64,000 bases of DNA, from positions 124,001 through 188,000 of IMG/VR virus record IMGVR_UViG_3300047994_000374. One strand, written 5' to 3'. Positions within the stretch are counted from its first letter, which is position 1, and each line of letters starts with the position of its first letter. The notes beneath the pieces were generated by a model that was not told the origin of the DNA, did no database searches, and saw only the letters and a list, made by a program, of their open reading frames with translations. The position numbers were made by a program, and so were the translations under genes. Positions 42,293 to 62,176 of the stretch are shown here, in pieces.

Positions 42293-42347
42293 GTGAAACT
42301 ACTAATTGTTTGAGATATATACATTATAGGTCCAAAGGAATAATAAA

Positions 42348-43196
42348 ATGAAAAAAGTAGGTCGTCCATCAATATTAAATATAACACAGAAAAAGGAAGT
42401 TGTCAAATATTATATCGAAAATCAAATGACACCAAATAAAATATGTAAAATTTTTTCTGTTTCAGAAGAAACAATTAGAAACATATTGATATCAGAAAAA
42501 GTGCCAAGAAGAACTTGCGCCGATTCTAAAAAACTAAGAATGAAATTTACATTCACAAAAATGAATAAAGATAAGGCTTTTTTATTGGGATTAATTTATG
42601 GCGACGGTTCAATAAGCAATAGGCAGTGCTATATTAATATAACTTCCGGTGATTTAGATTTACTAGAAAAAGCCCAAAATACATTTAAAAAATATGAAGG
42701 TGAATTTAAAATAGAACAAGTGAAGGGTAAAAAATATTATAGGGGTCATACCTATACTAAAAAACTGTGTGTGGAGTTATTTGATTTATTTAAGCTTACT
42801 AATAATAAGAGTGATAAATTAATATGGCCAAAATTAGATGATAAATTATTGCCTTATTTTATATCAGGATATTTAGCCACTGATGGTTGTATCACAATAG
42901 CAAAAAAAGATAATTTGTTACAGCTTATTTTTTATTCTTGTTCAGAGGGGCACTTGCAATCCTTAAATGAATACCTTTGTTATAAGACCAATTTGCCATT
43001 ACGTAAAATTTATAAACGTACAAAAATAAAAGGACATTTTGGTAAAAAGCCACTTTTTACTTTAAATTTCAATGGAATTAAAGCTGAAAAAGCTTGTGAA
43101 TTTATATTTGCCAATACTACTTCAGAAACAAGAAGTGATAGAAAGTTTTTAATATATAAAGAATTTATGAAATCTAAATATAATATTATTATTTAA
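42348..43196 (+). CDS. LAGLIDADG homing endonuclease with N-terminal HTH
   Basis: FLLGLIYGDGSI and FISGYLATDGCI motifs; opposite strand to neighbours. Confidence 0.85.
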   Translation: MKKVGRPSILNITQKKEVVKYYIENQMTPNKICKIFSVSEETIRNILISEKVPRRTCADSKKLRMKFTFTKMNKDKAFLLGLIYGDGSISNRQCYINITSGDLDLLEKAQNTFKKYEGEFKIEQVKGKKYYRGHTYTKKLCVELFDLFKLTNNKSDKLIWPKLDDKLLPYFISGYLATDGCITIAKKDNLLQLIFYSCSEGHLQSLNEYLCYKTNLPLRKIYKRTKIKGHFGKKPLFTLNFNGIKAEKACEFIFANTTSETRSDRKFLIYKEFMKSKYNIII

Positions 43197-43976: not shown

Positions 43977-45859
43977 TTATGATCCTAGGCTTTGAAATAC
44001 TGGGGCAGCTATGGCAGCAATCAATGCGCAGCCCGCTGGTGTTGGGTGAACTCCACCAGATTGAAAATATGTAGCATTATTTTTAGCACCAACGGTATTT
44101 AGTAGAGGTTGCGTGGTTAAATTTACTACTGCGTCGGCTCCTGCGGCGTTTGCAATAACAAGTGCGTTAAATGTAGCCCTATTAGTATCATATGTTGATT
44201 GTGGTGTAGATCCGGCATTTCGATCTATCATAGTCCATGCAATTACTTTCCAACCTGCTGCCTGTCTGGTTTGAATATATGATGTATAATTTGCATATAC
44301 CGATGCAGCACTTACCGATCCATTTGCAAGGTCATTTGTGCCACCAAAGCAGCTGCAAATATTAAGCTGAAATGCATCATAAAGTGGATCGATATATGTG
44401 GGTGCCAACTGAATCATTCCGGGCGTTCCAGCCAAGGTTTGTCCGCTTATTCCTTTATTTATTAATTTACCGAATTTATTGCCTAATAATGCTTCCAACT
44501 GTCCGACATAACCCTGTGTTGCAATATTGGTTAAGCCAAATCCTGCAGTAATTGAGTCGCCATCTGCTACAACATTATAAATTTGTGGGAATGATGGTAT
44601 GATATGCATAAACGGCGCATTTGCCGTTGGATATCCTTCAATCATTTGAACGCGCGAAGTCATTTGTAATGTTGTGCCATAGCCATTAATATTCATTCCG
44701 CCAGAAGGTGAGATACTTGCAAAAGTTGTTGCCCCAGAACTACCAAGGCTAATAAGCGGCTTTCCTACTGACATATAAGAGGCAGAGCTTTGTCCAGCAC
44801 CAAATGAAATCATAAAATGAAGTGATTTATTTTTTTTCCATGATAATACAACAGATGATAACCAGGCAGAACTATGTACAACGACATTGAGCTTACGAGT
44901 AGATGTAATCTCAATATATGTGGTTGAATCATTTGGATCGCTCCACAATCTACGTGGAAATGCGTATGCGGAAATATCAGCTTTTGGACACCATTGAAGA
45001 TGTAAATTTAGGCGTCCGCCCGAAAAGCATGCAGCTCCGTTTGGAATAAGAATTTCTTCACCCTGTCGACTCGCTGGATTAGGTGCAGTAGTTGCTGCAT
45101 TTGGAATATATTCAGTTGCAACTTGCCCAGCTTCTACTTGAAATCCCCATACATAAACACTAACAGGAACGATAGTGGGTTGTGTTCTTTGATCAAATGT
45201 CAATGCAGTCGCTGGTGAAACATATTGTTCAAAGCGATGCCAAATTGGTGTTGCATTGAAAGGTGGCAAATCATATGGTTTTACTTCGGTCGCGACGCCA
45301 TTTAAATTAATAAAAAGGTTTGTTGCTCCAGATCCAGAACTCCATTGGCATAATGAAAGCTCCAAATCGAGTTGGATTGTTGATTGCTTTCAAGCCAAAA
45401 TGCGTTATATGAGCTGGTATCTGGAACTGTAAGTAATGTTGCTGTTAAATTTCCGTCTGGCGCTTGTTCATTAGCCGTGGCAGTCCCGGTGCCTGGAGTG
45501 AATGCCCAAATCGATCCACTGCCCGTTGCACCTGGACCAACTGAAACGGGTCCGTTATTACTAGATGCATGATCAATAACAAGTCCGCGAGTTTCTGCAC
45601 TTTCACCAGCTTGACCAATACGAGCAATATTAGCTAATATTCCAGTAATAACGTCACCTTCACTAACTCTAACAGAGGCTGGAGGATCAGATGTTGTATT
45701 TGCGCATGCTCGAAGTAAAGATATTGTACCAGCGATTGGATCGGTTGGTAAAGTAGTTTGAGGTCCAATTCCTAATTTCGTAAAATCAAAAGACCATGAT
45801 GGAGTTATGGTTGAGCTTGATACAAATCCATTTTCATTTAATATAACGCCAATGCCCAT
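43977..45859 (-). CDS. Virion-associated carbohydrate-binding + SGNH/GDSL esterase protein, split by a -1 frameshift in 45302-45365
   Basis: APDG..TATLL half-domain in ORF 45302-45859 is continued by WHRF..VWGFQVEAG..ATEYIP in ORF 43977-45365; DGDSIT, GISG, GTND, VHP SGNH blocks. Confidence 0.7.
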
Positions 45860-48800
45860 TATAGTAATTCCTTACTATTTACGTCAATGGTCCAATCAAT
45901 AGTGGTTGTGTCACCAGCAATTTGTACAAGCCATGTATTACCTATTATGCCGATGGATGCCCCCCAAGCGGAACCATTACCAAATGTATCTGGCGCTGAA
46001 TCTGATGACCCACCTGATAATAAGTGTGGAGCGCTGGCGTTGTATCTATTGTAAGTTGCATGAAGTTTCCACTTAGCACTATCAGGACCATTTTTATTCT
46101 TAGCTAAAACCGTTACCTCGATAGCTGTTAAAGAGTCATCCTTTAAAGCTACTGGAGCAAAAGCATTTACAGGCGTTGCAGATGTCGTTCTAATTTTATA
46201 TTTGTTGGCTAATTCAGTTTGCTGACCATTACCATCAACCAATATCCATGATTGCGAGCCGCCGATCATTTGGAAAGATGAGAAAATTCCAATAGGTGGA
46301 GAAACTTCAGCTAAGTTTAAACCACCGCCGAAACCACTTACTAAACTTAACATATTTTGAACTTTACTCGAACCAACGAACAGTGGAGCGTTATTGAATC
46401 CGCCCTTCTTTAAAAATACGTTAACTTGAACTTTGGTGCTTAATGTAGTTAGAACTGCGTCTTCATAAAGATTTGTGAAATTTAATGTTAATAATCCGGT
46501 TGTGTAATCAATATTAACGCCCATCTTGCCATCTACAATTGCGCCATAATATCCGTCAGAACTTAAGCCATTGGTATTAGGCGAAAAGGATTGAACCGCA
46601 ACGCTGAAGCGCAACTGATCATTTGTTAGCGCTTCTGAAGTTACAAATGAACAATCGGCAAATCTTAATGATGGAAAACCTAGACGAGTGGTTCCATTGC
46701 CCGTATAATCGACAATGAAATCGTTCATAATATCAATCGTCTTTTCTGCACCAAAGAACCCGTCTGGAATTTCCAAAACAATGGTGCCTACTTCAAAATC
46801 TACCTTATAAAAATCACCATCTGGGCGCTTTAATTCACCAGTTCCAATGATTAAGTTATTGGGCGCGAAGACATCGACAACACCTGGATCGAAATCTTGC
46901 GGAACTGGATAAACGGATGATTGAACGCCTTCAATACTACAGTTATTAACAATCAATCCATTTTCAGAGCTAAAAATAGTGGGGACCAAACGACCCTGGC
47001 TGCTTACTGAAATAAGTGATTTATCCCAAGTTAATTCTTTATCAATCGCAATAGGAAGTGGGAAATGAAAGAAATCATGACCAGCTAAATAACCATCACC
47101 CAAGAAAATATCTTGCACTGGATGGACGGATACTGCACGAGTAGCTGGGTTTGAAGTGTAATCATCATTTCGATCGACAAACAACTCTACTCTTAATCGA
47201 ATGACATTGAAGCGGGAACCAATTTTAAGATAAGGATCTGAAGTGGGTCCTGGATACAAAGTAGATGCTGTTGGTATCGTTGGATTAACTTGCCTTTCAA
47301 TATATGCATTTAATAAATAGCCATCTGCATTTGAAATAACGAAATCGCCATCAATATCTGCTCTAAACATCTGGGCTAAATTATCACCCGTTAAAAATGT
47401 CTTACTAATCGTTAATGCGTTCGCTTCCACATCTAAACTAACAATATTAAATCCGCCCCAATCCGCCTCATTCACCGTAGAATTGAAGATAACAAGATTA
47501 TAAGAGCTTAACCCTATAATCTCATTAAAGAGCACTGTAGAGCTTGTAAAGACCGCCGTAGATGGAGATGAAGGATCAACGACAATGTATCCGTCATAAC
47601 CATCTGCTGCAACTAAATTGGTAGCAGGATCAACCAGTTGAAATTGAATAGTGGATAAATTAGCGAATGGCTGTGTTAATGTTTGATAGCCATTTGAAAA
47701 AGTTGTTGTATAGCCATCTGAAACGATTGTTGTGTGAGCCTGTAAGCCGACATTTAAATTATAACCTAAATAATTATTAAGAAGATCTAGATCACTTTCA
47801 TCTACAATCCCATCGCCGTTCACATCACCTAAAATCATTGAATCAAGGTGAGCATCTGCAATACGATAAAAAGTGGATGGATTGGTTGCATCTGGAATAA
47901 TTTTAGCACCAACTAAATCGCCATTAAGAAGATTGGTCATCAATCCAGAAACAGAAGTGTCGAACCTTTTTGCATCGGTAGGATCGTCAACCACTTTAAT
48001 AAGAAGCTCGTCAAAGGCAAATGCAGCTGAATACAAAGTGCTATTGATTTGTGAATCGCTTGGATTAAATGACTTAATGTTTTTATCAGATATTGTGCCG
48101 AGAACTAATGGCTCTGAAGCATTTTCTAAATTCGTAATATCAATTGTATTGAGAAGTTCAATAGATGGTTCATTTTGCTGACGAGAAAATACTGGATTGC
48201 CCGTTCTTTGATCTGGAACGGGAACGCTTTCAACATTTGCACTTTGATACACCAAACTATAAACATCATTGCCAGTGAATGAAGTTGCTGGAAATACATA
48301 ATCAATAGTGGATTGGGTGGTGGGGTCAAGGATAGTTTTCGTAATTTGAGATCCAACCCCCTGATCATAAGCTGCACCATCCGTAATTGTTGCCGAGTCG
48401 GTCCATACTTGAAACCATAAATCTTGATCTGTTAAATCAACCCACAATGAGCCTGTAAAAGAAGTCACTCTCGCATTGGCTGTTAAATCGCCACCGCCTG
48501 AAACAAGAATATCACAGGCATTATTTGAGCCGGATCGTTTGAGGGCGAAACAAAGATAAGAGCCAATATCAATTGTATTTCCATTAGCTACAGCAGAATT
48601 AGAGAAAATAAAATCGACAGGTTGTGGAATACTTGATAACACGATACCGGCTGCCATTAAGCTTGTGTAATTAAAGCTAATTTGAGCGAGTGGAATATTT
48701 GATGGTGAAAAATCAATGGGCAAGTTTGGAGTAATATCAGAATCGCAATTAACCGTAGATTGAAGTGGATAGATGCTTAAAATTAAATCACCAGTCCAAT

Positions 48801-49611
48801 TTAAATTTGTCGATTGTCCGAGTGTTGTATTTTGAACACTTAATAATACAGTTATCTTTTGAATGTTATTTGTGGTGGCTAAAAACTTTTCACCGATTTG
48901 AGAGGTTACATCATTTGCGGCAAGAGTAAATGCTTGGAGCTGTTGCGTTTGAATATTAAGCCGTGTAATATCGTAAAGTGGCAACGCTGCAATCAACATG
49001 TTTTGAAGCGAAGTGAAGCCCGTTGATGGATCTAAGAAGAAATTGGCAAATGGAAGATTAGGCTGCTCGACCTGTGATACCATGATTGGAGATGAGCTTA
49101 AAGTTAAAGGCGCTGCTTCTGAAATAACAAGACGACCACCCAAATTGAAACTGACTTTTGGATCACCATTTAAATCATTAAATAGAAGAACTAAAATTTT
49201 TGCGAAATGCTTTCTTGATATAAGCGTTTCATTGGTTTTAAAAATAAATGTTTCGTATTGAAGGTTGGAATTAAAATCAAGACCAATAACGATAACTTTA
49301 ACTTGTTTCGATCCGCTTGCTAAACTATTCGTTAATGATAAAGACAGTTGATTGCCGAAATTATTATCGGATGGTTGTGCTTGAGGAGAAATACTTTTAC
49401 CATCAATATAACCAACAACCAAATCGCTATCAAAAAGAATTGGTGCGATGAGATTTGAAGAAAGGATGCCTGACCCTATATGATTATTAATTAAAGCTAC
49501 GGTGGTTTGTGTTTGCGAATTTTGAAGCTCAGTCAGGTCTTCCGATTCGACTTGCTGAGAATCATAGAAGAGGCTTGTTTGAACACTGATTGGCAGTCTA
49601 TTATTAGGCAT
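45859..49611 (-). CDS. Large virion structural protein with split dockerin-like Ca-binding repeats
   Basis: GDVNGDGIVDESDL..L..YL and ADIDGDFVISNADG.LL..YI; late-type motif upstream. Confidence 0.65.
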   Translation of the reverse strand: MPNNRLPISVQTSLFYDSQQVESEDLTELQNSQTQTTVALINNHIGSGILSSNLIAPILFDSDLVVGYIDGKSISPQAQPSDNNFGNQLSLSLTNSLASGSKQVKVIVIGLDFNSNLQYETFIFKTNETLISRKHFAKILVLLFNDLNGDPKVSFNLGGRLVISEAAPLTLSSSPIMVSQVEQPNLPFANFFLDPSTGFTSLQNMLIAALPLYDITRLNIQTQQLQAFTLAANDVTSQIGEKFLATTNNIQKITVLLSVQNTTLGQSTNLNWTGDLILSIYPLQSTVNCDSDITPNLPIDFSPSNIPLAQISFNYTSLMAAGIVLSSIPQPVDFIFSNSAVANGNTIDIGSYLCFALKRSGSNNACDILVSGGGDLTANARVTSFTGSLWVDLTDQDLWFQVWTDSATITDGAAYDQGVGSQITKTILDPTTQSTIDYVFPATSFTGNDVYSLVYQSANVESVPVPDQRTGNPVFSRQQNEPSIELLNTIDITNLENASEPLVLGTISDKNIKSFNPSDSQINSTLYSAAFAFDELLIKVVDDPTDAKRFDTSVSGLMTNLLNGDLVGAKIIPDATNPSTFYRIADAHLDSMILGDVNGDGIVDESDLDLLNNYLGYNLNVGLQAHTTIVSDGYTTTFSNGYQTLTQPFANLSTIQFQLVDPATNLVAADGYDGYIVVDPSSPSTAVFTSSTVLFNEIIGLSSYNLVIFNSTVNEADWGGFNIVSLDVEANALTISKTFLTGDNLAQMFRADIDGDFVISNADGYLLNAYIERQVNPTIPTASTLYPGPTSDPYLKIGSRFNVIRLRVELFVDRNDDYTSNPATRAVSVHPVQDIFLGDGYLAGHDFFHFPLPIAIDKELTWDKSLISVSSQGRLVPTIFSSENGLIVNNCSIEGVQSSVYPVPQDFDPGVVDVFAPNNLIIGTGELKRPDGDFYKVDFEVGTIVLEIPDGFFGAEKTIDIMNDFIVDYTGNGTTRLGFPSLRFADCSFVTSEALTNDQLRFSVAVQSFSPNTNGLSSDGYYGAIVDGKMGVNIDYTTGLLTLNFTNLYEDAVLTTLSTKVQVNVFLKKGGFNNAPLFVGSSKVQNMLSLVSGFGGGLNLAEVSPPIGIFSSFQMIGGSQSWILVDGNGQQTELANKYKIRTTSATPVNAFAPVALKDDSLTAIEVTVLAKNKNGPDSAKWKLHATYNRYNASAPHLLSGGSSDSAPDTFGNGSAWGASIGIIGNTWLVQIAGDTTTIDWTIDVNSKELL

Positions 49612-49625
49612 GTGTTTCCATTATT

Positions 49626-49638
49626 ATGCGTGAATATT
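49626..49638 (-). promoter_or_regulatory. Late-type promoter candidate AATATTCACGCAT
   Basis: AATA-N5-GCAT about 15 nt upstream of ATG 49611. Confidence 0.45.
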
Positions 49639-49718
49639 GGGTGGGCTTACTTTTGACTTTATACCTATTATATATCCAATAAAATAATTGATTTTTTAAT
49701 AAAATCTACTAAAGTATT

Positions 49719-49734
49719 GATATATAGTTATATA
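49719..49734 (+). promoter_or_regulatory. GATATATAGTTATATA promoter candidate
   Basis: Identical 16-mer at 62161-62176 (minus) upstream of the baseplate J gene. Confidence 0.55.
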
Positions 49735-49737
49735 CAG

Positions 49738-50928
49738 ATGCTCAAGTCCTATAAATATCGCATTTATCCCACTAAAGAACAAGAAAAACACTTTGTTTAA
49801 TCAATGGGTTGTGTTCGTTATATTTATAATAAAGGTCTCGAAACAAAAATAAAATACTACGAAACAAATGGTAAAACATTAAATTATTTTGATATGGCAG
49901 GACCGACAGGGCTTTTAATTAAAGAAAAACGAGAATATACTTGGCTAAATATTCCCAATGCCCAGTCTCTTCAGATGAGTTTGAGGAATTTAGATAATGC
50001 TTTTACAAATTTTTTCAAAAAGAAAAGTAAATTCCCAGTATTTAAAAAGAAATCTGGACATGAGTCAATTCAATATCCACAATATGTTTTTGTAGATTTT
50101 AAAAATAACATAACTAAAATTCCAAAAGCAGGAAAAGTATTTACAGTTTTTGACAGGAAATTTGATGGCAAGATTAAAACTTGTACTGTATCCAAGACAC
50201 CAACTAATAAGTTTTTCATCTCAATTCTTGTGGATGATTCAAAAGAACTTCCAATGAAAGCACAGATCAATTCACTTACGGCAGTTGGTATCGATCTGGG
50301 CATTAAAGACTTCGCTATACTTTCAAATGGGGAAAAGGTCGCGAACCCAAAATATCTAAAGAAAGTTTTAAATAGAATTAAAGTTTTACAAAAAAGAGCC
50401 TCAAAGAAAACGAAAGGATCAAATAATAAAAAGAAAGCAAATTTAAAGATAGCAAGAGCTTATGAAAAAGTATCTAACCAGCGCACAGATTTTTTACAGA
50501 AGACTTCCACAAAAATAATTCGTGAGAACCAAACGATTATTTTAGAGGATCTTAATGTATCTGGTATGATGAAAAATCATAAGTTGTCTCAAGCAATCTC
50601 GGATGTTAGTTGGTCAGAATTCATACGCATGCTCACATACAAAGCCGAGTGGAATGGGAAAAACATTATTCACATAGGGCGGTTTGAACCGAGCAGCAAG
50701 TTATGTAATGAATGCGGTTGGAAGAATAAAGAATTAACTTTGGCAGACCGAGAGTGGTCATGCAAAGAATGCGGCGTAGTTCATGACAGAGATCTGAATG
50801 CCGCAATAAACATTAAAAAGTTTGGTCTGATAAAGGCTAAATCAGGGCAGGAATTGTCCGAAGAGCTTGTGGAGATGCCTCGTTGTAAAGGGGATCAAAG
50901 AAACAAGAAGTCAAAAACCGCAAGGTAA
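49738..50928 (+). mobile_element. tnpB: Solo IS200/IS605-family TnpB with in-frame TAA at 49798-49800
   Basis: MLKSYKYRIYPTKEQEKHFV*SMGCVRYIYN HTH start; RuvC GIDLG, ILEDL, DRDLNAA; CNEC/CKEC zinc finger; no tnpA in the window. Confidence 0.9.
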
Positions 50929-50960
50929 TTGATAGTTCACATCCGTTCTTTAAGCGTATT
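50843..50960 (+). ncRNA. Putative TnpB omega-RNA 3' scaffold/right end (ending TAGTTCAC at 50940) plus guide ATCCGTTCTTTAAGCGTATT
   Basis: Hairpins GGGCAG-GAA-TTGTCC and TCAA-AA-ACC-GCAA-GGT-AA-TTGA; TTCAC terminus typical of IS605 right ends; 5' boundary uncertain. Confidence 0.6.
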
Positions 50961-53900
50961 TTATAAAAGGACGGGAATTTGCAGGAGAAAGTGTTAGTAT
51001 GAGGCTGTTCAATATTTCTTTGAGCTTGGCGGAATTGGCAATCAAAGAGAATTCATCAAATATTGTTATTGTGAAATCGTTTGAATCATCACTGATTAGC
51101 GTTGCAAAATTCGTCACTAAAGATTTAGTCGAGTTGTCTTGCTGCAAATAAGTAGTGTATAAGTCTGATTCCACTGGAAAATTATTCTTTAAAATGCTCG
51201 TATAATTAACATCTAAATTCTCACCGAATACAGTATAAAGCGGACGATAAGCATTTGAAATACGAAGGTTGCTCAATAATGTATCAGCCCCTGACTGCTC
51301 TAAATAATCAGATCCTACATAAAGATAATTGATTGGATCACTAAAAAGAATAGTAGTCCCACTTAAGCCAGACCCACCTACCGTTGTTGATCCGAAGGTA
51401 TATGGATTTGAACCAAATAAAGCCCCTTGACCGAAAAGAAGGTTATTGTATTCGTATCCATCAAGGAATAAAGCCATCGTGCTATTTTTTGAATTAACCC
51501 GATATTGACATTTTACACGATGCCATGAGCCTGCATCCCAAACTGCCTGGGCTCTTAATGCATAATCCACATTGCTGGCTCGTATTTTGAAATTCATATA
51601 CCCAGCCGTATCTTTATAAATAGAAATGCGATCCCCTTGAACGCCTTGGGGCAGATAATTAACAACTACTTGACTATTTTGACTTGGAAGCTGTCTGTTT
51701 AATCTGATGACTTGACCGTTTAGGTTATTGTCTCCAGTGGCAGTTGATTTATAAATAACGCTCATTGTCAAATTACTTCTTGGCAAGGTTATACTCAAAT
51801 AAATTGTCTTGCCATCACTGCCGATAACGGAATCTTGTCCATAATCTTTGCCAGAAAGATCGCCGACAATTTTAACACTAATAACTTGTAGGATGGCTTG
51901 AGATACCTTGACCGATCCGTTGCCTTGGCTTGTGGTATTTTCTTGAATGGCGTTTTCCGTATCAATGCTCAATGTTCCACCAGCAAAATAATCGATAGTT
52001 GGATCGCCCGCTTTCAAAGTGACGCTTAAAATTTGACTTGCAGGATTGCTAATTTTTACACTGACATTATTCGTGCTTATGGCTTCCTCAACAATGGCAG
52101 AAGAGGCATCAAAGTAATACCGCTCTTGTGGGTCATTAGCCGTATCGTAAAGAGGGCTCATCCAAAATTCAATGGTTCCTTCTTTTTTGGTATCTAAAAG
52201 TCCTTCATTTGACAATACGATAGGCTTATCTAAAATAACAATGGACTGTGGAAAATTATCATTGACTGCCCAAGAACTTTGAAGTAAAGCTGTTTGCGAG
52301 TTACCGTTTGTATAAAAGTTAGCTATATTTGTAAAAGGAAATTCGTCGAAATTTATGAAAACCAGCGTATTCATATCTGGGTTCCATGGCTTTAAAGAGT
52401 TAAAATCTTTGGTGATGGAACGTTGGTTATTGGGTACAGACATTCCAATTCGAGTATCTTCTAGCATGATTGAATAAATGACCGTTTGATCAAGAACTGA
52501 ATTTGCCTGATGATGCCCAAACATATCTGAACCCAAATAAATATATTCAGCGCTAAATGGCTTGAACTTAATACTGGCATAAGTTTCATATTCCAATTTA
52601 TAAAAACCATCTCTCAAAAGATATGGCGTACCTGGCATATTTTTTAATTCAAATGTAAAGAACCCGTTTTGCAATCCAGAGCGGTAAGCATTGACATCTA
52701 AAATTTGATAAGTGCCAGCGGTAAATGAAGCGACTGTTCCACCGCCAACTGGACTGACAGTTAATGAGTGCCTGTCCGTAGATACTGCCGAAATAACATA
52801 ATATCCTGCCGCTTGTGCTGGAGAGCTAATCATCAAATAATTTCCGACATCGCCCATTGAAAATAAATTATATCCATCTGAAACGGTCGAGCCCGAACCT
52901 GATAATGTATAGCCTCCACCAATGTGATATGAGAAACGAACAATAGGAACATAGCCGTCAGAAAATTCAGCATAAGTTAATGGATATTTTTCTTCTACTA
53001 TAACAGCTCCAGCATTCTTGGATGAATTAATTGGTTTTACAACTACCTGAATATAACTGATAGCCTGATAAGCATGAACAAAATTCAATGTACCATAATC
53101 AGAGAATGATATGGTTTCAGTGATTGGTGAATTCGATGATGTTCCATGAATAATTACTTGAGCCGGTGTTGTAAAATCGATATTAGTTCCAGACAATGTT
53201 GCAGACAGCGTTCGCCCTAAAATATTATTAGTTGGCGGCGAGAATGGTAAATTATTTGAAGTAAAAATACCGCCTGACAATGTTGAGTTCGCTGGTCCAA
53301 TCGCAATATTTGGAACGATAATTTTTGTGATTGTCGCTTGGTCTAATGAGATGGGTGGCGGCAACTGGGTCATGAGCACATTCTCATAGCCATCACTCCA
53401 TACATAATAATTTTGTTTAACTGTCCTACTATTTATTCCGAAGGTGCGAATAAGAATTAAATCATTTTTGAAAACATCATTGAATACGGTAAGTACATTA
53501 TTGAAATTACTATCTTGTGATATAGAATAGTCTGGACGAAGTGCATTAACCCCAGGCAACTCATTCTCTGTATTGGAATAAATTTGATAAGTTGCGTTTG
53601 TTAAATTGATTGTAGCTTCATCTGTTATTGTTAATGAATGCCCTGAAACCTGAAGGATCGTATAGGTTAAATTAAATGCGCCGTTATCAATTCTTAATAA
53701 ATAACCTGGAAGAACATTTGCAGTCGTAAAGTTTGTTGAAGTAGAAGATACGGTTGGTGAATTAATGGTTACTTGTAAGTCGGCTCCCGTGATAAATGTA
53801 TGAATGGTTGAAATCGCAACGCTTGGAGCTACATTGATATCTGATGTAATAAAATAGTTTGTTTGATTCACTGAAAATCGCGCATTTGTCAATGTGGTTG

Positions 53901-56900
53901 GCATTGCCGTATTCAAAGTAAGCGTTTGCCCATTAATGTTTGTAATGGTGTATCCTGCAGTATTAAATCCGATCTCGTTAATAAATATCGTATTGCCGAT
54001 CGATATGTTATAGGCAGAAAAATTAATAGATGAAGTTACAACGGGAGATCCTATTGCCGTAACTAAATCGTCTGAACCAATAATGTCTGATGAGGCTAAT
54101 CCAACAACTTCTTCCGGATCAATGGTTCTGTATTTCTCATGCAGATATGGATTAAGTTTTTGTCCATATCTAATGATATTTGGAACTTCAAATCCATCAA
54201 TAAATAAGTGCATCTCATCACGGTTGTTTCTGGAATTTAATTTCCATGAGGCTGCAACCATATGTGGTTCATTCATTTTCCATGAAGATATATCTGATGA
54301 TAATGAGTACGCAACGCCATTTTTATCAAAAACTCTAAAATTCATATAACCGGAAACATCTTTAAAAATAGAAAGGCGTGAGTTATTTTTCGCTGTTCCA
54401 AAATCCAAAATAAAATGCTCTATATCTGAAACAAAACTAAATCCTTCATCAATAGGAAATCCACCTGTAATTGTAACGGTCGCTGAATTGGTTCCAGTAG
54501 TAGTTGTAAGATTGGAGGGCTTTGGAAGTGTTAAAGATTGAAGGTCATAAAACTTTCCATTTGAACTAATTTTAACTGTATAGGTATTATTATTAGCAAA
54601 TACATAGCCGTCAATGATTTCTACATACCAGCGAAGATAATTGCCAGAAGCATCATTATCATAATAAATGAATACGCCATCTTTATTTGTATTTGGATAA
54701 CCAGATACATTATCATTCTTATTGAGTGAAAAATTGCCAGCAGATATTATTGGGTGATATTCTGATGCTCCAATGAATACTCGTGACGGGGCAATGGGCA
54801 AATTATTAACTGTGATTTGAAATGTCAATTCTGCATCATTATCCAAACCATTCCATTGTGGAAGTATCCATTGTTCAAATGATCCTTCTTCTAATCGTAA
54901 GTTTGAATTAGCAGGAATTTTTATAGTTTGATTGCTATTAATTAGAGCGCCGTTGCCATACTTTGCAGGAACCAATTGAAACGAGCCAGTTGTGATTGGT
55001 GGTTCAGGAAATAGAATAGACGATCCTAATGACCAAGAATTAAATGCAGATTCAACAATGGCTGGTTCAATGTGAGAAATAATTTGTCCAATATTTTTCA
55101 TTGCCGCAATCGTTGGACCCTGAATGAATGAAGATAGGGCTGCCATTAATGCATCACGATATCTTTCACGATCAAGCTCCAAATCAAAAGTAGCAAGTAA
55201 AGGAACATTAACAAGCGTTCCGAAATTTTTTAATAAGGCATCACGGAGAGCACCAACTTTATAAGAAACATAATATTGCGTTCCTTGTGGTAAATTTTTA
55301 TTTTGACGAAAATCTAATGCATTGTCACCATATTCATAAGAAACAAGAATTTCATCGGCAACATAACTGTAATCAATAAAGAAATCACCTTTATTGTAAT
55401 CAACAACTACCCTAGCTAATGAATTGATTGTGAATGAATAATTGACATTAACTAAATCTCCAATAGCAGGAGATCCAGTTCCAGGCAATACTAATTTAAT
55501 TGGATTTCCTGGAACAACAGATCCAGAACTACTATTCCATAATTGCTGCCCATCAGACACTCGAACAACACTAAATGTGTATGTAATTGTTGAAGATAAA
55601 AATGGAATATTTTCATTTAAATTAACATAAAAATGCGTTCCATCATATTGAACGTTTTCAAAAGCCTGTTTATTAATAGGCTGAACTGTAATCACATTGC
55701 CAGAGAACGTAGAAGATTGGGCAAAATTAGTTGGAGAAGTGTTATTCGATAAATCATTAAAATCAAAAATAGATCGAACGAATTTGATTTGATTTGTGAC
55801 ACCGTCTACGAAAGTTGAACCAACAAACGCTCCAATTTCATTATTGAATATTTGATATGGTGCAGAAACGGTATCATTCAAAAATGCTTCATCAGAGACA
55901 TCTAAATTATCTGGAACAATACTTGTATCCCCAAATGATACATAAGTAAATTGTTTATTTTTTGGATTAAGTGGTGAAATGCGATAATAAATATCATTAA
56001 CACTTATGATATGTGAATTATCCGGCACGATACTATTTTTCTTATAAGATGCCGAGCCAATATTGAAATCTTGATCGTTCGCTACTGCAACATAAACAAT
56101 ACCATTTCCATAATCAACCATATATTGTCCAACAGCTGTTAATCGCTGTAGATTGGTTGTCACATTAAACTCAATATTGTACCATTTTTCAGAAACGAAA
56201 ACTGCTGTATTATTAAATGTAAGGGTCGTATTAAAAGAAGATCCGATCGCATCTTGTGTGCCAGCAATAATATTATTATCTGCCAAAAATATGGTGAAAA
56301 TTTTAATACCATTATTAACCGTATTATTAACTGTTAAAAGCTCATTGGAGACATCTAAAAATGAAGAATTCTCACCTATGTTTGAAAGTATTCTTGGGGC
56401 ACTATTGTATCTAAAATAAACGCGGTTGTCTTCCCAACGATCAACATTATAAATTTCACCAGACGTTTCGTTATATACTTGAAAAACATCAGTAATGGGT
56501 GAGTTTTCAGTAGTCAAAACATTGATTGCATTTAAACGATTGGCAACTCTTTCATTTAACGATTCTTCATGAACTTCTGCAATATAATCAGTACCAGGAA
56601 CTAAAATTTGTTCGTAATTAAAAGTAACCGTTCCTGGAAAATTAATTAAAGAACCGTTTGGTAATGAAACTACATCTAAACTATCAGGATCAAGAACATA
56701 ATCGATTTCTGAACTGTAATCAAATTTGTAGTAGTAAGTTGCTAATGGTGGAGATGGTCCTGTTCCGTCATTAAGTCCGCTTGAACCATATACATAAACA
56801 GTTCCATTTGGATAATCAATTGAATATTGTCCAATCATAAATGGAAGTGATGATAAGCTGAATGGAATTTCAGTTGTAAACGCTGGGTGAGGCGTACCAA

Positions 56901-58056
56901 GAGTAGAATTAGGATCTGTGAAAACAACATCCCCTATTTCGCCAGGATTATTCGAAGCATCTGTGATAGGGGCGTTCTTTAAATTAAATACATTAATGAT
57001 TGGAGGTAATACTTCACGAATAGATTGTAGCGTTGTAAAAACATCAAGTGAGGCATCGTCAATCTGACGCCCTAAACTTTTATATTCGTATTGTATTGTG
57101 ATATTAAAAATTTGATCGATGGCAAAGTTTGGATCCTCTAAAACTTTTTCACTTAATTTAACTTGATTGTCTTCAAGCAGTAGGTAAGATGATGCAAAAT
57201 CCTGATCATATCTTGAACTTTCTAATTGATAGCCGAGAGTTGGGATATCATAAGTATAGTTTGGATAAGATGTAAGTAAAGTAAAAGTAATGCTATCTAC
57301 CTTACTTATTGGGTTGTTTTGCAAATTAAAAGTGAGCGTATTGATGTTAAAAGTTCCAACTTGATCTTCTGATGATGGTAAAATTAAATCAGTTGTGATT
57401 TGGCGCTGTAAAGTAATTGGATATGAAGGGAAATCATCAAACACCATATTCATAGTTGCATTTGATGCAGTTGGACCTAGGCCGACCCGCATTACTTCGT
57501 AGGCACTCTCTTCATTTAAACGATCAAATGGTCCGGGTCCTCGATATTTCTGTTCGTCAATGATTGTGTAAGATAAGTAATTTTCATTTTTAGCTTGACG
57601 AATATCATAAAGCGCGCGTGACATATTAATCGAAAGTGATTGAATATAACTTGCGAGGACTGGACTTGCTAAATCATAAATATTATTCTGAAAATATGCG
57701 GACAGGTAATTGGCAACTGGATTATCAGATGACATTGGTCCAGTGATTAATGTTTTATTTGATATGCCATCATTACCGATTTGCGCATCTGCATTGATAG
57801 AGATAAATGGATTAGCTGCGGTCGATTGAAATTGAAGAAAATACGCAGCCAATGTAGTAAGTGGCTGGCATGTAATAGTTAGTGTAGCTCCTACAACACT
57901 CACTTGAAGAACTTCTGAATCAGGAGCGTTTGGCGTTTGAGATAAAATAGAAACGTTTGCCGGCACTAATTCTGGAGTCAAATTCGAAGTGAAAGTGACT
58001 GCGATTTCAGTGGAACTATTGATAACAACATTGAGTATTCTAAGGTTTTGTGCCAT
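50950..58056 (-). CDS. Very large baseplate/wedge-type structural protein with LamG-like domains
   Basis: 2368 aa; RERYRDAL...FIQGPT..AM baseplate-wedge-like segment; EG(S/T).E.W..P, HMVAASW, LFIDG/LFLDG LamG motifs; coupled to baseplate J. Confidence 0.65.
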   Translation of the reverse strand: MAQNLRILNVVINSSTEIAVTFTSNLTPELVPANVSILSQTPNAPDSEVLQVSVVGATLTITCQPLTTLAAYFLQFQSTAANPFISINADAQIGNDGISNKTLITGPMSSDNPVANYLSAYFQNNIYDLASPVLASYIQSLSINMSRALYDIRQAKNENYLSYTIIDEQKYRGPGPFDRLNEESAYEVMRVGLGPTASNATMNMVFDDFPSYPITLQRQITTDLILPSSEDQVGTFNINTLTFNLQNNPISKVDSITFTLLTSYPNYTYDIPTLGYQLESSRYDQDFASSYLLLEDNQVKLSEKVLEDPNFAIDQIFNITIQYEYKSLGRQIDDASLDVFTTLQSIREVLPPIINVFNLKNAPITDASNNPGEIGDVVFTDPNSTLGTPHPAFTTEIPFSLSSLPFMIGQYSIDYPNGTVYVYGSSGLNDGTGPSPPLATYYYKFDYSSEIDYVLDPDSLDVVSLPNGSLINFPGTVTFNYEQILVPGTDYIAEVHEESLNERVANRLNAINVLTTENSPITDVFQVYNETSGEIYNVDRWEDNRVYFRYNSAPRILSNIGENSSFLDVSNELLTVNNTVNNGIKIFTIFLADNNIIAGTQDAIGSSFNTTLTFNNTAVFVSEKWYNIEFNVTTNLQRLTAVGQYMVDYGNGIVYVAVANDQDFNIGSASYKKNSIVPDNSHIISVNDIYYRISPLNPKNKQFTYVSFGDTSIVPDNLDVSDEAFLNDTVSAPYQIFNNEIGAFVGSTFVDGVTNQIKFVRSIFDFNDLSNNTSPTNFAQSSTFSGNVITVQPINKQAFENVQYDGTHFYVNLNENIPFLSSTITYTFSVVRVSDGQQLWNSSSGSVVPGNPIKLVLPGTGSPAIGDLVNVNYSFTINSLARVVVDYNKGDFFIDYSYVADEILVSYEYGDNALDFRQNKNLPQGTQYYVSYKVGALRDALLKNFGTLVNVPLLATFDLELDRERYRDALMAALSSFIQGPTIAAMKNIGQIISHIEPAIVESAFNSWSLGSSILFPEPPITTGSFQLVPAKYGNGALINSNQTIKIPANSNLRLEEGSFEQWILPQWNGLDNDAELTFQITVNNLPIAPSRVFIGASEYHPIISAGNFSLNKNDNVSGYPNTNKDGVFIYYDNDASGNYLRWYVEIIDGYVFANNNTYTVKISSNGKFYDLQSLTLPKPSNLTTTTGTNSATVTITGGFPIDEGFSFVSDIEHFILDFGTAKNNSRLSIFKDVSGYMNFRVFDKNGVAYSLSSDISSWKMNEPHMVAASWKLNSRNNRDEMHLFIDGFEVPNIIRYGQKLNPYLHEKYRTIDPEEVVGLASSDIIGSDDLVTAIGSPVVTSSINFSAYNISIGNTIFINEIGFNTAGYTITNINGQTLTLNTAMPTTLTNARFSVNQTNYFITSDINVAPSVAISTIHTFITGADLQVTINSPTVSSTSTNFTTANVLPGYLLRIDNGAFNLTYTILQVSGHSLTITDEATINLTNATYQIYSNTENELPGVNALRPDYSISQDSNFNNVLTVFNDVFKNDLILIRTFGINSRTVKQNYYVWSDGYENVLMTQLPPPISLDQATITKIIVPNIAIGPANSTLSGGIFTSNNLPFSPPTNNILGRTLSATLSGTNIDFTTPAQVIIHGTSSNSPITETISFSDYGTLNFVHAYQAISYIQVVVKPINSSKNAGAVIVEEKYPLTYAEFSDGYVPIVRFSYHIGGGYTLSGSGSTVSDGYNLFSMGDVGNYLMISSPAQAAGYYVISAVSTDRHSLTVSPVGGGTVASFTAGTYQILDVNAYRSGLQNGFFTFELKNMPGTPYLLRDGFYKLEYETYASIKFKPFSAEYIYLGSDMFGHHQANSVLDQTVIYSIMLEDTRIGMSVPNNQRSITKDFNSLKPWNPDMNTLVFINFDEFPFTNIANFYTNGNSQTALLQSSWAVNDNFPQSIVILDKPIVLSNEGLLDTKKEGTIEFWMSPLYDTANDPQERYYFDASSAIVEEAISTNNVSVKISNPASQILSVTLKAGDPTIDYFAGGTLSIDTENAIQENTTSQGNGSVKVSQAILQVISVKIVGDLSGKDYGQDSVIGSDGKTIYLSITLPRSNLTMSVIYKSTATGDNNLNGQVIRLNRQLPSQNSQVVVNYLPQGVQGDRISIYKDTAGYMNFKIRASNVDYALRAQAVWDAGSWHRVKCQYRVNSKNSTMALFLDGYEYNNLLFGQGALFGSNPYTFGSTTVGGSGLSGTTILFSDPINYLYVGSDYLEQSGADTLLSNLRISNAYRPLYTVFGENLDVNYTSILKNNFPVESDLYTTYLQQDNSTKSLVTNFATLISDDSNDFTITIFDEFSLIANSAKLKEILNSLILTLSPANSRPFIKYA

Positions 58057-61000: not shown

Positions 61001-62150
61001 TATCAAATCCAAAAGGACTTCCGCCATATGCACCCATGTCTTTAATGAGTTCAAAATTTCCTGATACACGACCATAACTATCGGTGGTTTTTGGGGTAAA
61101 ATTCGATCCGCTCAATGATCCAGTAACCGTCAGAAGCGTATCAACGGGTTGTGCTGGCAATTGTCCATTTGCGATATCATCAATCCGACGACGATTAATG
61201 GTTTTATTTGCATCGGCTGCAATTTGACCTAATACAAAGTTATTTTTTGGATTGGTTGGATCGCCTGTATTGCTTTTATCTTGGTAAATATAAGTGTCAG
61301 TATTTTGAACTTCGTTAGTTCCGAGGACAACGACATCTACCTTGCCTCCGGAGCCTTCAGAAATGACCGTTAAAACGCCATTCTCCACAGCTGATACAGT
61401 TCCATCCCTGGTCATCAAAGGATTACCTGGACCGATTACAGCCGCATCTTGAACGCCTGTTGTTCCAAGCGCTGCATTCAAATATCCTAATGTCGTTCCA
61501 ACGCTTGATCCAGAGAACGCAGATAGAATTCGATTTCGAAAAGCAGCATCTGTTTCTTGATCTGTTCCGCCATTAAAAGCATTTACATTGGTTACATTAT
61601 TGACACCAGAAATCGATGTAGATGATAAAGCATATTGCCCTATGTTGCTGGATGAACCTGGAGCCGATGCAATAACCGTCACTTGAATAGCGTATTGATC
61701 TGTAATGCCAGCAAATGCTAATTGAGCTTGAAATTGCGTGGCAACAGAACGATAATAATTAAGATTAGATGGAATTAGTGAAACGCCCGTATTAACAACG
61801 AATGATAACCCATTGTTTGCCGTGATACTCGCGCCCTTGTTTACATTGATTGTCGCATTAAGTGATGAAAATGTAAGTAAAGCAATTCCGGTAGAAGTTG
61901 TGGATTGCTTTCGAATAAGACCGAAATTTTTTGCTAATTTATCTAAATCTGAGCCAACAGAAAGGCGAAGTGACTGTTTGTTTGAAATTCCAGAAAGCTC
62001 ATCATATAATAAAGAAAGTTGGGCTGCGGGACCTTCAATAAATAGATCGCGAGCTACTGAACCGGGCGAGGTCGTCATGTTAGGCTGCGCCAGACGAAAA
62101 AAATCGAGCAGATTTAAAATAATTTCTGACGATGACCTTAAGTTTACCAA
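58056..62150 (-). CDS. Baseplate J-like protein with large insertion
   Basis: PGSVARDLFI, DLDKLAKNFGLIRK, G..SNI, GGTDQETDAAFRNRI, GGKVDVVV. Confidence 0.85.
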   Translation of the reverse strand: MVNLRSSSEIILNLLDFFRLAQPNMTTSPGSVARDLFIEGPAAQLSLLYDELSGISNKQSLRLSVGSDLDKLAKNFGLIRKQSTTSTGIALLTFSSLNATINVNKGASITANNGLSFVVNTGVSLIPSNLNYYRSVATQFQAQLAFAGITDQYAIQVTVIASAPGSSSNIGQYALSSTSISGVNNVTNVNAFNGGTDQETDAAFRNRILSAFSGSSVGTTLGYLNAALGTTGVQDAAVIGPGNPLMTRDGTVSAVENGVLTVISEGSGGKVDVVVLGTNEVQNTDTYIYQDKSNTGDPTNPKNNFVLGQIAADANKTINRRRIDDIANGQLPAQPVDTLLTVTGSLSGSNFTPKTTDSYGRVSGNFELIKDMGAYGGSPFGFDTFAWTSNAIDFQEDIVKGQNNGQDATTFTDVTEITSATQNLNITNENSAVTTDRSIIQLIHTPAASVTRVFNTNTGERYVVTNQNYDNTPTYNLTGRIQISGNTLPSPSDVLQVDYTWIIGFDPYSDFDGLKSTENPRPSTDSIDWGYASAVRNELIEFTAVTGNNYFIGNTSHPIDTVISTDNYLKIDGYIQQVQSGIFTGRLSVVTSFLAIATNTVDSVVLTNSNVELYDTAQSNGSFTSIPIVVGTNLLYTTTIILPSDAVASVNDVVSVYLNSTNVYQSSTAQGSSSGTQITIPSSLINTTGDSIVLKVTYIANVSDLYSSAVTSLPASRCGNGYNTLNNNGFNNFSIVNVSRRENQIVQKNLSNQYFVELSINTTDYSLLQGQVISIIRLSDGKELWNENNGGQIVNGTDGNYQLILTGFNAPVTNDRVLILYYALDVRRFQPFSFNNEVIKTSVNQLSLDVATNSFTVPISSFTAQVSGLSFNVIDANSDGYYFVVSDGYLSFNGSGQAQVTSPTVNFSTLPDITNKVVKIINASTPNNNGTYDILSYNASTNEITITLTTSHLIKDQIAVVRLLDGQELWNYSGTIDLVNNRLLIPVSTNASVGDEVFVMFFNFQNIRQAPTRIIGTIADQNVNTGVINIAGTTMTLAQDIVFTATATGLYQNLQEALRKTLNLNSSASIPSNIKIAKIVKLEKVDTYTIGSDIVLETLATYDIKNTTLSSNLYYAEDMLANPALSSLDFILPNTVNNSSTGATNNLPAIGDQLRITFYYTTDNDQESLSFTRIGTLYTNKKFALINKMYVSSGFGASQATKFTATSFTKPNLGARYTAFYDYLAPKQNERIVIQYNYNKLISDVTFSVENSRPINADVLVRGDKLAQLDLTINVVIAANYLNSTTTVLQNLRNQLVTALTSTTLGETIDQVTLINVAQAVTGISRARILYFNQTGLKGQILTFNANGDQGFEPNNIIINTEVR

Positions 62151-62160
62151 AATCGCTCCT

Positions 62161-62176
62161 TATATAACTATATATC
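62161..62176 (-). promoter_or_regulatory. GATATATAGTTATATA promoter candidate
   Basis: Intergenic, followed by AGGAG SD. Confidence 0.55.

What the first reader, a model, noticed from the sequence alone, without database searches (positions are those of the whole stretch)
49719..50960. Solo tnpB wired to a phage promoter, with intact RuvC and omega-RNA but an early stop
Seen: tnpB lies antisense between two virion genes with no tnpA and no obvious left-end hairpin. Just before its ATG is GATATATAGTTATATA, identical to the 16-mer upstream of the baseplate J gene. Catalytic D/E/D residues and the zinc finger are intact. The right end TAGTTCAC is followed by a guide that runs into the 3' end of the 2368-aa baseplate gene. 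Codon 21 is TAA, with an ATG two codons later. Inference: it behaves like an RNA-guided free-standing homing endonuclease cutting tnpB-less relatives, now inactivated or attenuated; the omega-RNA would also be antisense to the structural transcript. TTGAT at 49688 and 49717 are possible TAM/left-junction positions (speculative).
Basis: partly seen in the sequence, partly recalled or inferred. Interest (0 to 1): 0.6.

Follow-up and report, generated by a model that had tools for sequence, protein, structure and literature searches.

The report
Broken solo TnpB element in huge phage
A 1.25-kb selfish element encoding an RNA-guided nuclease (TnpB) and its guide RNA sits between two tail-module genes of a 394-kb phage. 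It is an ordinary member of a known element type, recently disabled by a stop codon, and the promoter-like box in front of it belongs to the element rather than to the phage.

Summary
The window is part of a 394-kb viral contig. Related phages have only 4-10 nt, or in one case a free-standing HNH endonuclease gene, where this phage has tnpB.

Comparison with an 85%-identical copy in a different context sets the element at 49693-50940. A TTGAT lies just 5' of it, at 49688-49692. The right end ...TAGTTCAC lies 12 nt after the stop codon, and the guide is the next 16-20 nt, running into the end of the 2368-aa gene.

The RuvC D/E/D residues and the zinc finger are intact. The guide-RNA scaffold keeps all 23 covarying stem pairs and an ISDra2-like pseudoknot.

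Codon 21 is TAA where nine of ten homologues have Gln. An independent assembly carries the same TAA, so the stop is real and recent.

The 16-mer is not phage wiring. It lies inside the element's left end and is kept 15/16 in the other copy. Its first 8 nt, GATATATA, are a genuine gene-start motif of this phage. The exact 16/16 match upstream of baseplate J remains unexplained.

Homing between co-infecting phages is a reasonable inference but could not be tested, because no tnpB-less allele exists in the databases. TnpB in phages and TnpB homing are already known.

The parts
49688..49692 (+). TTGAT, candidate transposon-adjacent motif (TAM) immediately 5' of the left end
   Evidence: T[T/C]GAT lies at the aligned position in 6 of 10 aligned copies in different contexts, and -GAT in 8. 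Sequence further 5' is unrelated between copies. It is the same TAM as ISDra2, the closest natural solved relative (PMC10097598).
49693..49737 (+). Left end of the element, 45 nt, with no Shine-Dalgarno sequence before the ATG
   Evidence: DNA homology with L013 (different flanks) begins at about 49693-49700. The block is conserved across the clade. There is no significant hairpin in this copy (z = -0.47) and no consensus structure across copies.
49719..49734 (+). Promoter-like box GATATATAGTTATATA inside the left end
   Evidence: L013 keeps 15/16 of it, and a G[AG]TATA box lies at this place in 7 of 11 clade copies. Its first 8 nt equal the phage's gene-start motif.
49738..49800 (+). First 20 codons of tnpB plus the TAA at codon 21 (49798-49800)
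   Evidence: The 20 residues are identical to L013, with 6 synonymous and 0 non-synonymous codon differences. Nine of ten homologues have CAG or CAA (Gln) at codon 21. The TAA is also present in an independent assembly, L056.
49804..50928 (+). Remaining tnpB ORF, 374 aa from Met23. RuvC residues are D186 (50293-95), E270 (50545-47) and D352 (50791-93); the zinc finger is at 50704-50772
   Evidence: Pfam families. Alignment to ISDra2 TnpB 8bf8/8exa, E = 8e-69, starting at residue 25 of that protein. dN/dS against L013 is 0.07 over codons 1-350.
50824..50940 (+). Guide-RNA (omega RNA) scaffold of about 117 nt, lying inside the 3' end of tnpB plus 12 nt. The 5' limit is approximate
   Evidence: Five helices, 23 pairs, 90.7% of cells paired against 34-49% when partners are slid, 16 pairs with compensatory changes, 0 of 500 shuffles as good. 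The window forms a standard pair at all 23. A pseudoknot joins GAA 50851-53 with UUC 50936-38, with a compensatory change in L062. dS falls to 0.17 here.
50933..50940 (+). Right-end terminus TAGTTCAC
   Evidence: (T)AGTTCAY or a close variant ends the homology in all ten copies. The sequence beyond it is unrelated between copies.
50941..50960 (+). Guide segment (the next 16-20 nt): a 9-nt spacer, the stop codon and the last codons of the 2368-aa gene, read antisense
   Evidence: Its position follows from the right-end boundary. In TnpB elements the guide is the flank 3' of the right end (PMC10097598; PMC10055086)..
50950..58056 (-). 2368-aa gene of the tail/baseplate module, with an intact C-terminus
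   Evidence: It ends ...FIKYA*, against ...FIQYTK* in relatives. It matches no family.
45859..49611 (-). 1250-aa gene downstream of the insertion
   Evidence: Its N-terminus is homologous to the 1331-1333-aa genes that follow the big gene directly in relatives.
49669..49676 (-). GATATATA box of the phage itself, 57 nt 5' of the 1250-aa gene and just outside the element
62161..62176 (-). Second exact copy of the 16-mer, abutting the Shine-Dalgarno sequence of the Baseplate_J gene (TTG start at 62150)
   Evidence: It is absent at this place in most of 46 relatives.

Best explanation
This is a 1248-bp, TnpA-less element of the IS200/IS605 family: a solo tnpB with its guide RNA, related to ISDra2.

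What is shown:
- It is inserted 3' of a TTGAT in the spacer between two large tail-module genes of a 394-kb phage, antisense to them.
- Its 45-nt left end carries its own promoter-like box placed so close to the ATG that the mRNA would have almost no leader.
- The guide-RNA scaffold occupies the last ~105 nt of the gene plus 12 nt.
- The guide is whatever lies beyond ...GTTCAC, here the end of the 2368-aa gene.

What is inferred from published TnpB biology: when intact, the nuclease-RNA complex would cut any copy of this phage locus that lacks the element, where TTGAT is directly followed by the guide-matching sequence. Repair from an element-bearing genome would then copy the element in. That amounts to homing between co-infecting or replicating phage genomes.

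Present state: a recent nonsense mutation at conserved Gln21 has cut off the first WED-domain strand. At best, re-initiation at Met23 gives a 374-aa protein that is probably inactive. The element is therefore most likely a newly disabled selfish passenger, not a working phage function.
For: - Family and catalytic centre.
- It is an insertion. Relatives L006, L008 and L009 have the stop, then 4-7 nt, then the next ATG. L012 has an HNH endonuclease gene at the same junction.
- Boundaries come from the 83%-identical copy L013 in other flanks and from nine further copies.
- Guide-RNA structure with covariation and a pseudoknot. The synonymous rate collapses over that stretch.
- The stop is real and recent. 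It appears in a second assembly. Gln is present in nine of ten homologues, the first 20 codons show only synonymous differences, dN/dS is 0.07, and there is no other lesion.
- Met23 aligns with residue 25 of ISDra2 TnpB, whose WED strand beta-1 is residues 1-12 (PMC10097598).
- All ten contexts of homologues at least 60% identical look like phage DNA and lack tnpA. The best hit among 185,579 species genomes is 58% identical.
- Homing by TnpB: PMC10055086. Homing between co-infecting phages has been proposed: PMC13565253.
Against: - No tnpB-less allele of this phage could be found, so TAM-plus-target adjacency in an empty site is not shown.
- ISDra2 K76, which reads the G of TTGAT, is Ala in this protein (my reading of the alignment). 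The TAM therefore rests on flank comparison only, and two aligned copies deviate (TTCAT, GTAAT).
- Some relatives have a strong left-end hairpin (L015 and L060, z about -3.2). TnpA acting in trans is therefore not excluded for the lineage.
- Whether the truncated protein is dead has not been tested.
- Only 64 kb of the 394 kb were read, so a tnpA or further copies elsewhere in the genome cannot be ruled out.
Confidence: 0.6

Rival explanations
1. The element is attenuated rather than dead. Ribosomes that stop at TAA (49798-49800) restart at the ATG 3 nt later, and the 374-aa protein, alone or together with the 20-aa peptide, still binds the guide RNA and cuts.
For: The ATG lies 3 nt after the stop. 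The other 374 codons carry no lesion, and the guide RNA is intact. The same allele was assembled in further samples, so it persists.
Against: The product would lack beta-1 of the seven-stranded WED barrel, which holds the guide-RNA pseudoknot and the start of the heteroduplex (PMC10097598). Lack of further decay is equally expected for a very recent mutation.
Confidence: 0.2
2. It is an ordinary insertion sequence that hopped in from the unknown host, mobilised in trans by a TnpA. It has no phage-specific life style, and the promoter box is a generic -10-like element.
For: TnpB genes are common in phage records: 427 of 50,697 have a hit, and some are identical to host copies (bioRxiv 10.64898/2026.02.14.705889). 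The TAM, the right-end hairpin and, in some relatives, a left-end hairpin fit the IS200/IS605 pattern. The other contigs that carry clade members show little GATATATR use outside the element.
Against: No homologue above 58% identity exists in 185,579 species genomes, whereas all those at 60-85% are on phage-like contigs without tnpA. The left end of this copy has no significant hairpin. The host lineage may, however, simply be unsampled.
Confidence: 0.15
3. The locus serves the phage as RNA. The tnpB or guide-RNA transcript, antisense to the tail-module operon, regulates or terminates structural transcription.
For: The element is antisense to both neighbours, and no terminator-like site lies between them. 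A phage-type box restarts the 1250-aa gene just outside the element.
Against: Only 16-20 nt of guide overlap the structural gene. Clade members sit in either orientation: antisense in 4 contexts and co-directional in 7. Relatives do without any insert at this site.
Confidence: 0.04
4. The TAA is an assembly or sequencing error and the gene is intact.
For: The data come from metagenome assembly, with no reads at hand.
Against: A 2575-bp contig from a different assembly (ERZ12298642) is 100% identical, including the TAA.
Confidence: 0.01

Closest known systems
ISDra2 TnpB with its omega/reRNA (Deinococcus radiodurans; PDB 8bf8, 8exa, 8h1j)
   Same: - It is the best natural solved relative (E = 8e-69; an AI-designed nuclease, 9yyg, scores higher at 1.9e-76), with the same domain order.
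- The D/E/D residues and the zinc finger match.
[quoted passage not shown]
- A pseudoknot uses the UUC three to five nt before the guide (PMC10097598).
- TTGAT lies 5' of the left end.
   Different: - There is no tnpA in the element.
- The left end is only 45 nt and has no clear hairpin in this copy.
- Only 12 nt separate the stop codon from the right end.
- The TAM-reading K76 is not conserved.
- The element sits in a phage and its ORF is broken.
TnpA-less (IS1341-type) tnpB-only elements of the IS200/IS605 family
   Same: A single tnpB flanked by family-type ends, with a target motif 5' of the left end and the guide taken from the 3' flank.
   Different: Those are typically multi-copy in cellular genomes and mobilised in trans. 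Here a single copy was seen in 64 kb, and the nearest relatives are all on phage-like contigs.
Free-standing homing endonuclease genes of large phages (T4 Seg/Mob type)
   Same: - It sits between conserved genes and is absent from relatives.
- A relative has an HNH endonuclease gene at the same junction.
- This phage's own LAGLIDADG gene (42348-43196) is likewise antisense to its neighbours and preceded by GATATATA.
   Different: Target recognition would be by RNA guide plus TAM, not by protein. The element has defined transposon ends. Homing has not been shown here.
TldR, nuclease-dead phage-encoded TnpB relatives that act as RNA-guided repressors
   Same: A phage-borne TnpB-family protein with a guide RNA.
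   Different: TldR proteins have lost the RuvC catalytic residues and have guides matching host promoters (bioRxiv 10.1101/2023.11.30.569447). Here D/E/D are intact, and the guide is simply the flank of the element.

Membership tests
IS200/IS605-family TnpB (OMEGA) element | TnpB protein architecture: N-terminal HTH/WED, OrfB_IS605 RuvC, zinc-finger TNB | tested here: met
   Pfam PF12323, PF01385 and PF07282. Alignment to ISDra2 TnpB, E = 8e-69.
IS200/IS605-family TnpB (OMEGA) element | RuvC D-E-D triad and CxxC...CxxC | tested here: met
   D186, E270 and D352; C323/C326/C342/C345.
IS200/IS605-family TnpB (OMEGA) element | Structured guide RNA overlapping the 3' end of tnpB and ending at the right end | tested here: met
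   23 pairs, 16 with compensatory changes, 0 of 500 shuffles as good, plus a pseudoknot. Expression was not tested. There is no Rfam family for it.
IS200/IS605-family TnpB (OMEGA) element | Conserved target/TAM motif directly 5' of the left end | tested here: inconclusive
   T[T/C]GAT in 6 of 10 aligned copies, and -GAT in 8. No empty site is available and no cleavage assay was done.
IS200/IS605-family TnpB (OMEGA) element | Subterminal hairpins at both ends for the Y1 transposase | tested here: inconclusive
   A right-end hairpin is present in all copies. The left end has z = -0.47 in the window and -3.2 in L015 and L060, with no consensus structure.
IS200/IS605-family TnpB (OMEGA) element | Cognate tnpA in the element (autonomous form) | tested here: not met
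   The flanks are structural genes. No Y1 transposase is among 10 of the 13 ORFs of 112-187 aa in the window. The rest of the 394-kb genome was not read.
IS200/IS605-family TnpB (OMEGA) element | Uninterrupted tnpB reading frame | tested here: not met
   TAA at codon 21.
Free-standing phage homing endonuclease (works like) | Present or absent between conserved neighbouring genes in related phages | tested here: met
   There is an HNH gene at the same junction in L012.
Free-standing phage homing endonuclease (works like) | Cuts the allele that lacks it and is copied in by repair | not testable with these tools
   The nearest relatives are 53-65% identical in the flanking proteins. There is no empty allele.
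TldR-type domesticated TnpB | Loss of RuvC catalytic residues | tested here: not met
   The triad is intact.

The most novel reading that the evidence does not exclude
The TnpB clade at least 60% identical to this one is a phage-resident lineage. It spreads without TnpA, by RNA-guided homing between co-infecting phage genomes. It carries in a short, hairpin-poor left end a promoter tuned to the transcription system it lives in. Pieces of such left ends are occasionally left behind as promoters of phage genes, which would explain the exact 16-mer in front of baseplate J.
Probability: 0.2. Interest if true: 0.6.

Novelty: new member of a known kind. Interest (0 to 1): 0.35.

Why it matters
TnpB is the ancestor of Cas12 and a genome-editing tool, and how TnpA-less copies persist and spread is still debated.

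This locus adds a well-delimited phage-borne example with four useful features:
- A clean insertion site.
- A covariation-supported guide RNA of ISDra2 type packed almost wholly inside the coding sequence.
- A left end that carries a promoter-like box directly before a leaderless-type start.
- Relatives that are all on phage contigs.

It also shows that the same junction between tail genes is used by a protein-guided HNH endonuclease in a sister phage. That is the kind of evidence expected if TnpB behaves as an RNA-guided homing endonuclease in phages.

The copy itself is broken, and the general ideas are already published, so its value is as a documented case and as a source of intact homologues to test. 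It is not a new mechanism.

Tried and rejected
- Rfam: no hit at gathering thresholds in the window. Only two chance-level hits (E = 1.5 and 2.5) in 49500-51100.
- GenBank phages: no close DNA relative.
- Empty-site search. The 22-nt right flank occurs only in this contig in IMG/VR. The left-end pattern also occurs only here. The nearest homologue of the 1250-aa protein among 5.8 billion proteins is 65% identical.
- Consensus hairpin of the left end: RNAalifold finds none.
- Sigma-70 and terminator scan of 49400-51200: counts are no better than shuffles, the box is not picked up, and no terminator is found.
- The 16-mer as pure chance: rejected. The first half is a real motif (P about 5e-9), and the second half is not shared by the other six boxes.
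- The 16-mer as a phage promoter captured at this site: rejected, because L013 carries 15/16 of it in another genome.
- Stop-codon recoding: rejected, because the 1250-2368-aa ORFs read through under the standard code.
- The GATATA box as a general feature of TnpB left ends: rejected. It occurs in 1 of 51 viral and 0 of 13 genomic relatives of about 50% identity. The gut-virus copies have TAnnTTTG there instead.
- The box as evidence that all clade hosts share the phage's promoter type: not supported.
- Other copies: no second tnpB and no right-end fragment in the window.

Full report
WHAT IS THERE

The window is part of IMGVR_UViG_3300047994_000374, a 394,192-bp viral contig of about 35% G+C. 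Around the finding almost all genes run on the minus strand, in this order:
- a gp25-like baseplate gene (62193-62636);
- a 1364-aa Baseplate_J/wedge gene (58056-62150; Pfam 1e-19, phrog_6 7e-33);
- a 2368-aa gene (50950-58056);
- a 1250-aa gene (45859-49611);
- a 462-aa gene with a GDSL-lipase domain.

The two giant proteins match no family. Calling them virion genes rests on position only.

Between them, on the plus strand, lies tnpB, with ATG at 49738 and stop at 50926-50928. Pfam finds HTH_OrfB_IS605, OrfB_IS605 (8e-30) and Cas12f1-like_TNB (1e-23). The closest natural solved structure is ISDra2 TnpB (E = 8e-69; an AI-designed nuclease, 9yyg, scores slightly higher). The catalytic D186, E270 and D352 and both CxxC pairs are in place. 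Codon 21 is TAA and codon 23 is ATG.

IT IS AN INSERTION, AND ITS ENDS CAN BE SET

Seven related huge-phage contigs carry the homologous pair of giant genes, about 53-55% identical in protein. In L006, L008 and L009 the stop of the first gene is followed after 4-7 nt by the ATG of the second, and in L007 after 10 nt. L010 and L011 have longer spacers. The window has 1338 nt there. The C-terminus of the 2368-aa protein (...FIKYA*) and the N-terminus of the 1250-aa protein are both intact and homologous to those of the relatives.

The closest TnpB in 5.8 billion proteins is P0002: 85% identical, 396 aa and uninterrupted. It sits on a small phage-like contig (L013) between quite different genes. 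DNA identity between the two copies is 83%. It starts at window position ~49693-49700 and stops at 50940-50942.

Nine further copies, 60-69% identical in protein and in other contexts, agree on the ends:
- On the right, every copy ends with a short hairpin followed by (T)AGTTCAY or a close variant. Beyond that the sequences are unrelated.
- On the left, a conserved block of 40-52 nt precedes the ATG. At its outer edge 6 of 10 aligned copies have T[T/C]GAT, and 8 have -GAT. The window has TTGAT at 49688-49692.

The element is therefore 49693-50940 (1248 bp). Its TAM candidate is the TTGAT at 49688, and its guide starts at 50941. The second TTGAT (49717) lies inside the left end.

THE GUIDE RNA

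Only 12 nt separate the stop codon from the right end, so the scaffold must lie inside the coding sequence. RNAalifold on ten copies recovers three helices, with 10 of 14 pairs showing compensatory changes.

A five-helix model read from the alignment gives the following:
- 90.7% of cells paired, against 34-49% when the partners are slid by 1-3 columns;
- 16 of 23 pairs with changes on both sides;
- no shuffle out of 500 as good.

The window forms a standard pair at all 23 positions. The loop GAA (50851-53) can pair with the UUC three to five nt before the guide (50936-38). ISDra2 has the same pseudoknot (PMC10097598). L062 has changed both sides, GGA with UCC.

Between the window and L013 the synonymous rate is about 1.0 over codons 1-350 but 0.17 over codons 351-396, where dN/dS rises to 1.2. 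That is the signature of an RNA-level constraint. The scaffold, about 117 nt from 50824 to 50940, is intact. Expression was not tested, and Rfam has no family for it.

THE STOP CODON

Nine of the ten homologues read Gln (CAG or CAA) at codon 21, in the motif HFVQ[SA]MGC; L277 has Arg. A 2575-bp contig from a separate assembly is 100% identical to the window, including the TAA. It is therefore not an assembly error.

Several observations say the protein was under strong purifying selection until very recently:
- The first 20 codons differ from L013 only by six synonymous changes.
- dN/dS over the body of the gene is 0.07.
- There is no other lesion.

Met23 aligns with residue 25 of ISDra2 TnpB. 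In that protein, residues 1-12 are strand beta-1 of the seven-stranded WED barrel, and the REC domain is inserted after it (PMC10097598). A product restarted at the ATG 3 nt after the stop would lack that strand. I infer that it is inactive or badly impaired. This has not been shown.

THE '16-MER PROMOTER'

The 16-mer occurs exactly twice. The second copy abuts the Shine-Dalgarno sequence of the Baseplate_J gene.

Its first 8 nt, GATATATA, occur eight times in the window. Seven of those lie within 70 nt 5' of a start codon in the sense orientation. Those zones cover only 3.15% of strand positions, and 4.9% of same-composition 8-mers fall there. GATATATA ranks first of 280 permutations, with P about 5e-9. 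It precedes these genes:
- baseplate J;
- the 1250-aa gene (box at 49676-49669, just outside the element);
- the genes starting at 10386, 29663 and 15949;
- a LAGLIDADG homing endonuclease gene (42348-43196), which is itself antisense to its neighbours;
- tnpB.

It is therefore a real gene-start motif of this phage and is promoter-like.

The box in front of tnpB nevertheless lies inside the element. L013 has 15/16 of it in another genome, and related boxes (G[AG]TATA..., then TATAsA 7-9 nt before the ATG, with no Shine-Dalgarno sequence) are present across the clade. The element brings this box with it. It was not plugged into a resident promoter.

More distant TnpBs carry other boxes at the same spot. 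Gut-virus copies have TAnnTTTG, which to my knowledge is the Bacteroidota -7 type. Only 1 of 51 viral and 0 of 13 genomic relatives have G[AG]TATA there. Left ends thus appear to carry whatever promoter suits their setting. I could not show that the other clade hosts use GATATATR for their own genes.

The identity of positions 9-16 with the baseplate J box is not explained by the motif, because the other six boxes differ there. Most of 46 relatives have no such box in front of baseplate J. L241 has one that resembles the left end of L062 in 16 of 17 positions. Three readings remain open:
- a longer bipartite consensus;
- gene conversion between the two boxes;
- a left-end fragment left behind in front of baseplate J.

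HOW IT MOST LIKELY WORKS

The anatomy is shown: TAM, short left end with a promoter-like box, tnpB, an internal guide-RNA scaffold, the right end, and a guide taken from the flank.

The mechanism is inferred from established TnpB biology. TnpB-guide RNA complexes cut TAM-flanked sites that match the guide, which are the sites that lack the element, and recombination restores or copies the element (PMC10055086). The same process between co-infecting phages has been proposed as 'non-restorative homing' (PMC13565253).

Circumstantial support here:
- The element is absent from relatives.
- A sister phage has a free-standing HNH endonuclease gene at the very same junction (L012 9553-10467, phrog_559 9e-28).
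- All ten contexts of homologues at least 60% identical look like phage DNA and lack tnpA.
- The best match in one genome for each of 185,579 species is 58% identical.

Points against, or still open:
- No empty allele exists to test TAM-target adjacency.
- Some relatives have a strong left-end hairpin, so TnpA acting in trans cannot be excluded.
- Only 64 kb of the genome were searched for tnpA and for other copies.
- The antisense-regulator idea has nothing specific in its favour. Clade members sit in either orientation.

COMPARISON AND NOVELTY

By protein, catalytic centre, guide RNA and ends, this is a member of the IS200/IS605 TnpB family, of the TnpA-less kind and nearest to ISDra2. It fails two tests: the reading frame is interrupted, and there is no tnpA.

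It works like a free-standing phage homing endonuclease gene, but that has not been tested. It is not a TldR-type domesticated repressor, because the catalytic triad is intact.

TnpB genes occur in 427 of 50,697 GenBank phage records, and their homing role is published. The finding is therefore a new member of a known kind. The modestly new observations are the promoter-like box carried inside a very short left end, the apparent restriction of the close clade to phage contigs, and the unexplained 16-mer identity with a structural-gene promoter.

VERDICT

Interest is 0.35.

Noticed in passing
window 42348-43196 (+), box at 42314-42321: A 282-aa LAGLIDADG homing endonuclease gene (PF14528 1.6e-9; phrog_4645 1e-29). 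It is antisense to its minus-strand neighbours and preceded by the same GATATATA box as tnpB.
   Followed up: partly
L012 9553-10467 (+): In a related phage, the junction that holds tnpB in the window is occupied by a 304-aa HNH-type endonuclease ORF (phrog_559 9e-28), overlapping the end of the 2378-aa gene by 11 nt. The junction looks like a hot spot for selfish nuclease genes.
   Followed up: partly
window 10365, 15998, 22296, 29686, 42314, 49676, 49719, 62176 (5' ends of the boxes, each on the strand of its gene): GATATAT[AG] is a gene-start-associated motif of this phage. Eight of ten copies lie within 70 nt 5' of a start codon in the sense orientation. Which RNA polymerase or sigma factor reads it is unknown.
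   Followed up: partly
window 62150 (-): The Baseplate_J gene starts with TTG, whereas all 46 related loci have ATG at the homologous codon. It is also unusual among them in having a 42-nt spacer with the 16-mer box.
   Followed up: no
window 49612-49692: Apart from the element, this phage has an 81-nt spacer with its own GATATATA box before the 1250-aa gene, where L006, L008 and L009 have 4-7 nt. Whether it predates the insertion or is a remnant of an earlier one is unknown.
   Followed up: no
L065-L105 (viral contigs, mostly sample 3300045988): TnpB relatives of about 50% identity carry TAnnTTTG 5-7 nt before the ATG instead of the GATATA box. This suggests that left-end promoters track the host transcription system, with starts of the leaderless type.
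   Followed up: no
L057 2067-2116: In this homologue the annotated tnpB ORF (P0003, 412 aa) runs 49 nt past the right end (...GAGTTCAT at 2067) into flanking DNA. The C-terminal tail of the called protein is therefore flank-encoded.
   Followed up: no
window 43977-45365 (-): A 462-aa protein with a C-terminal GDSL lipase/acylhydrolase domain (PF13472 1.7e-17) and a weak tail-protein match lies within the tail module. It is possibly a tail-associated esterase.
   Followed up: no
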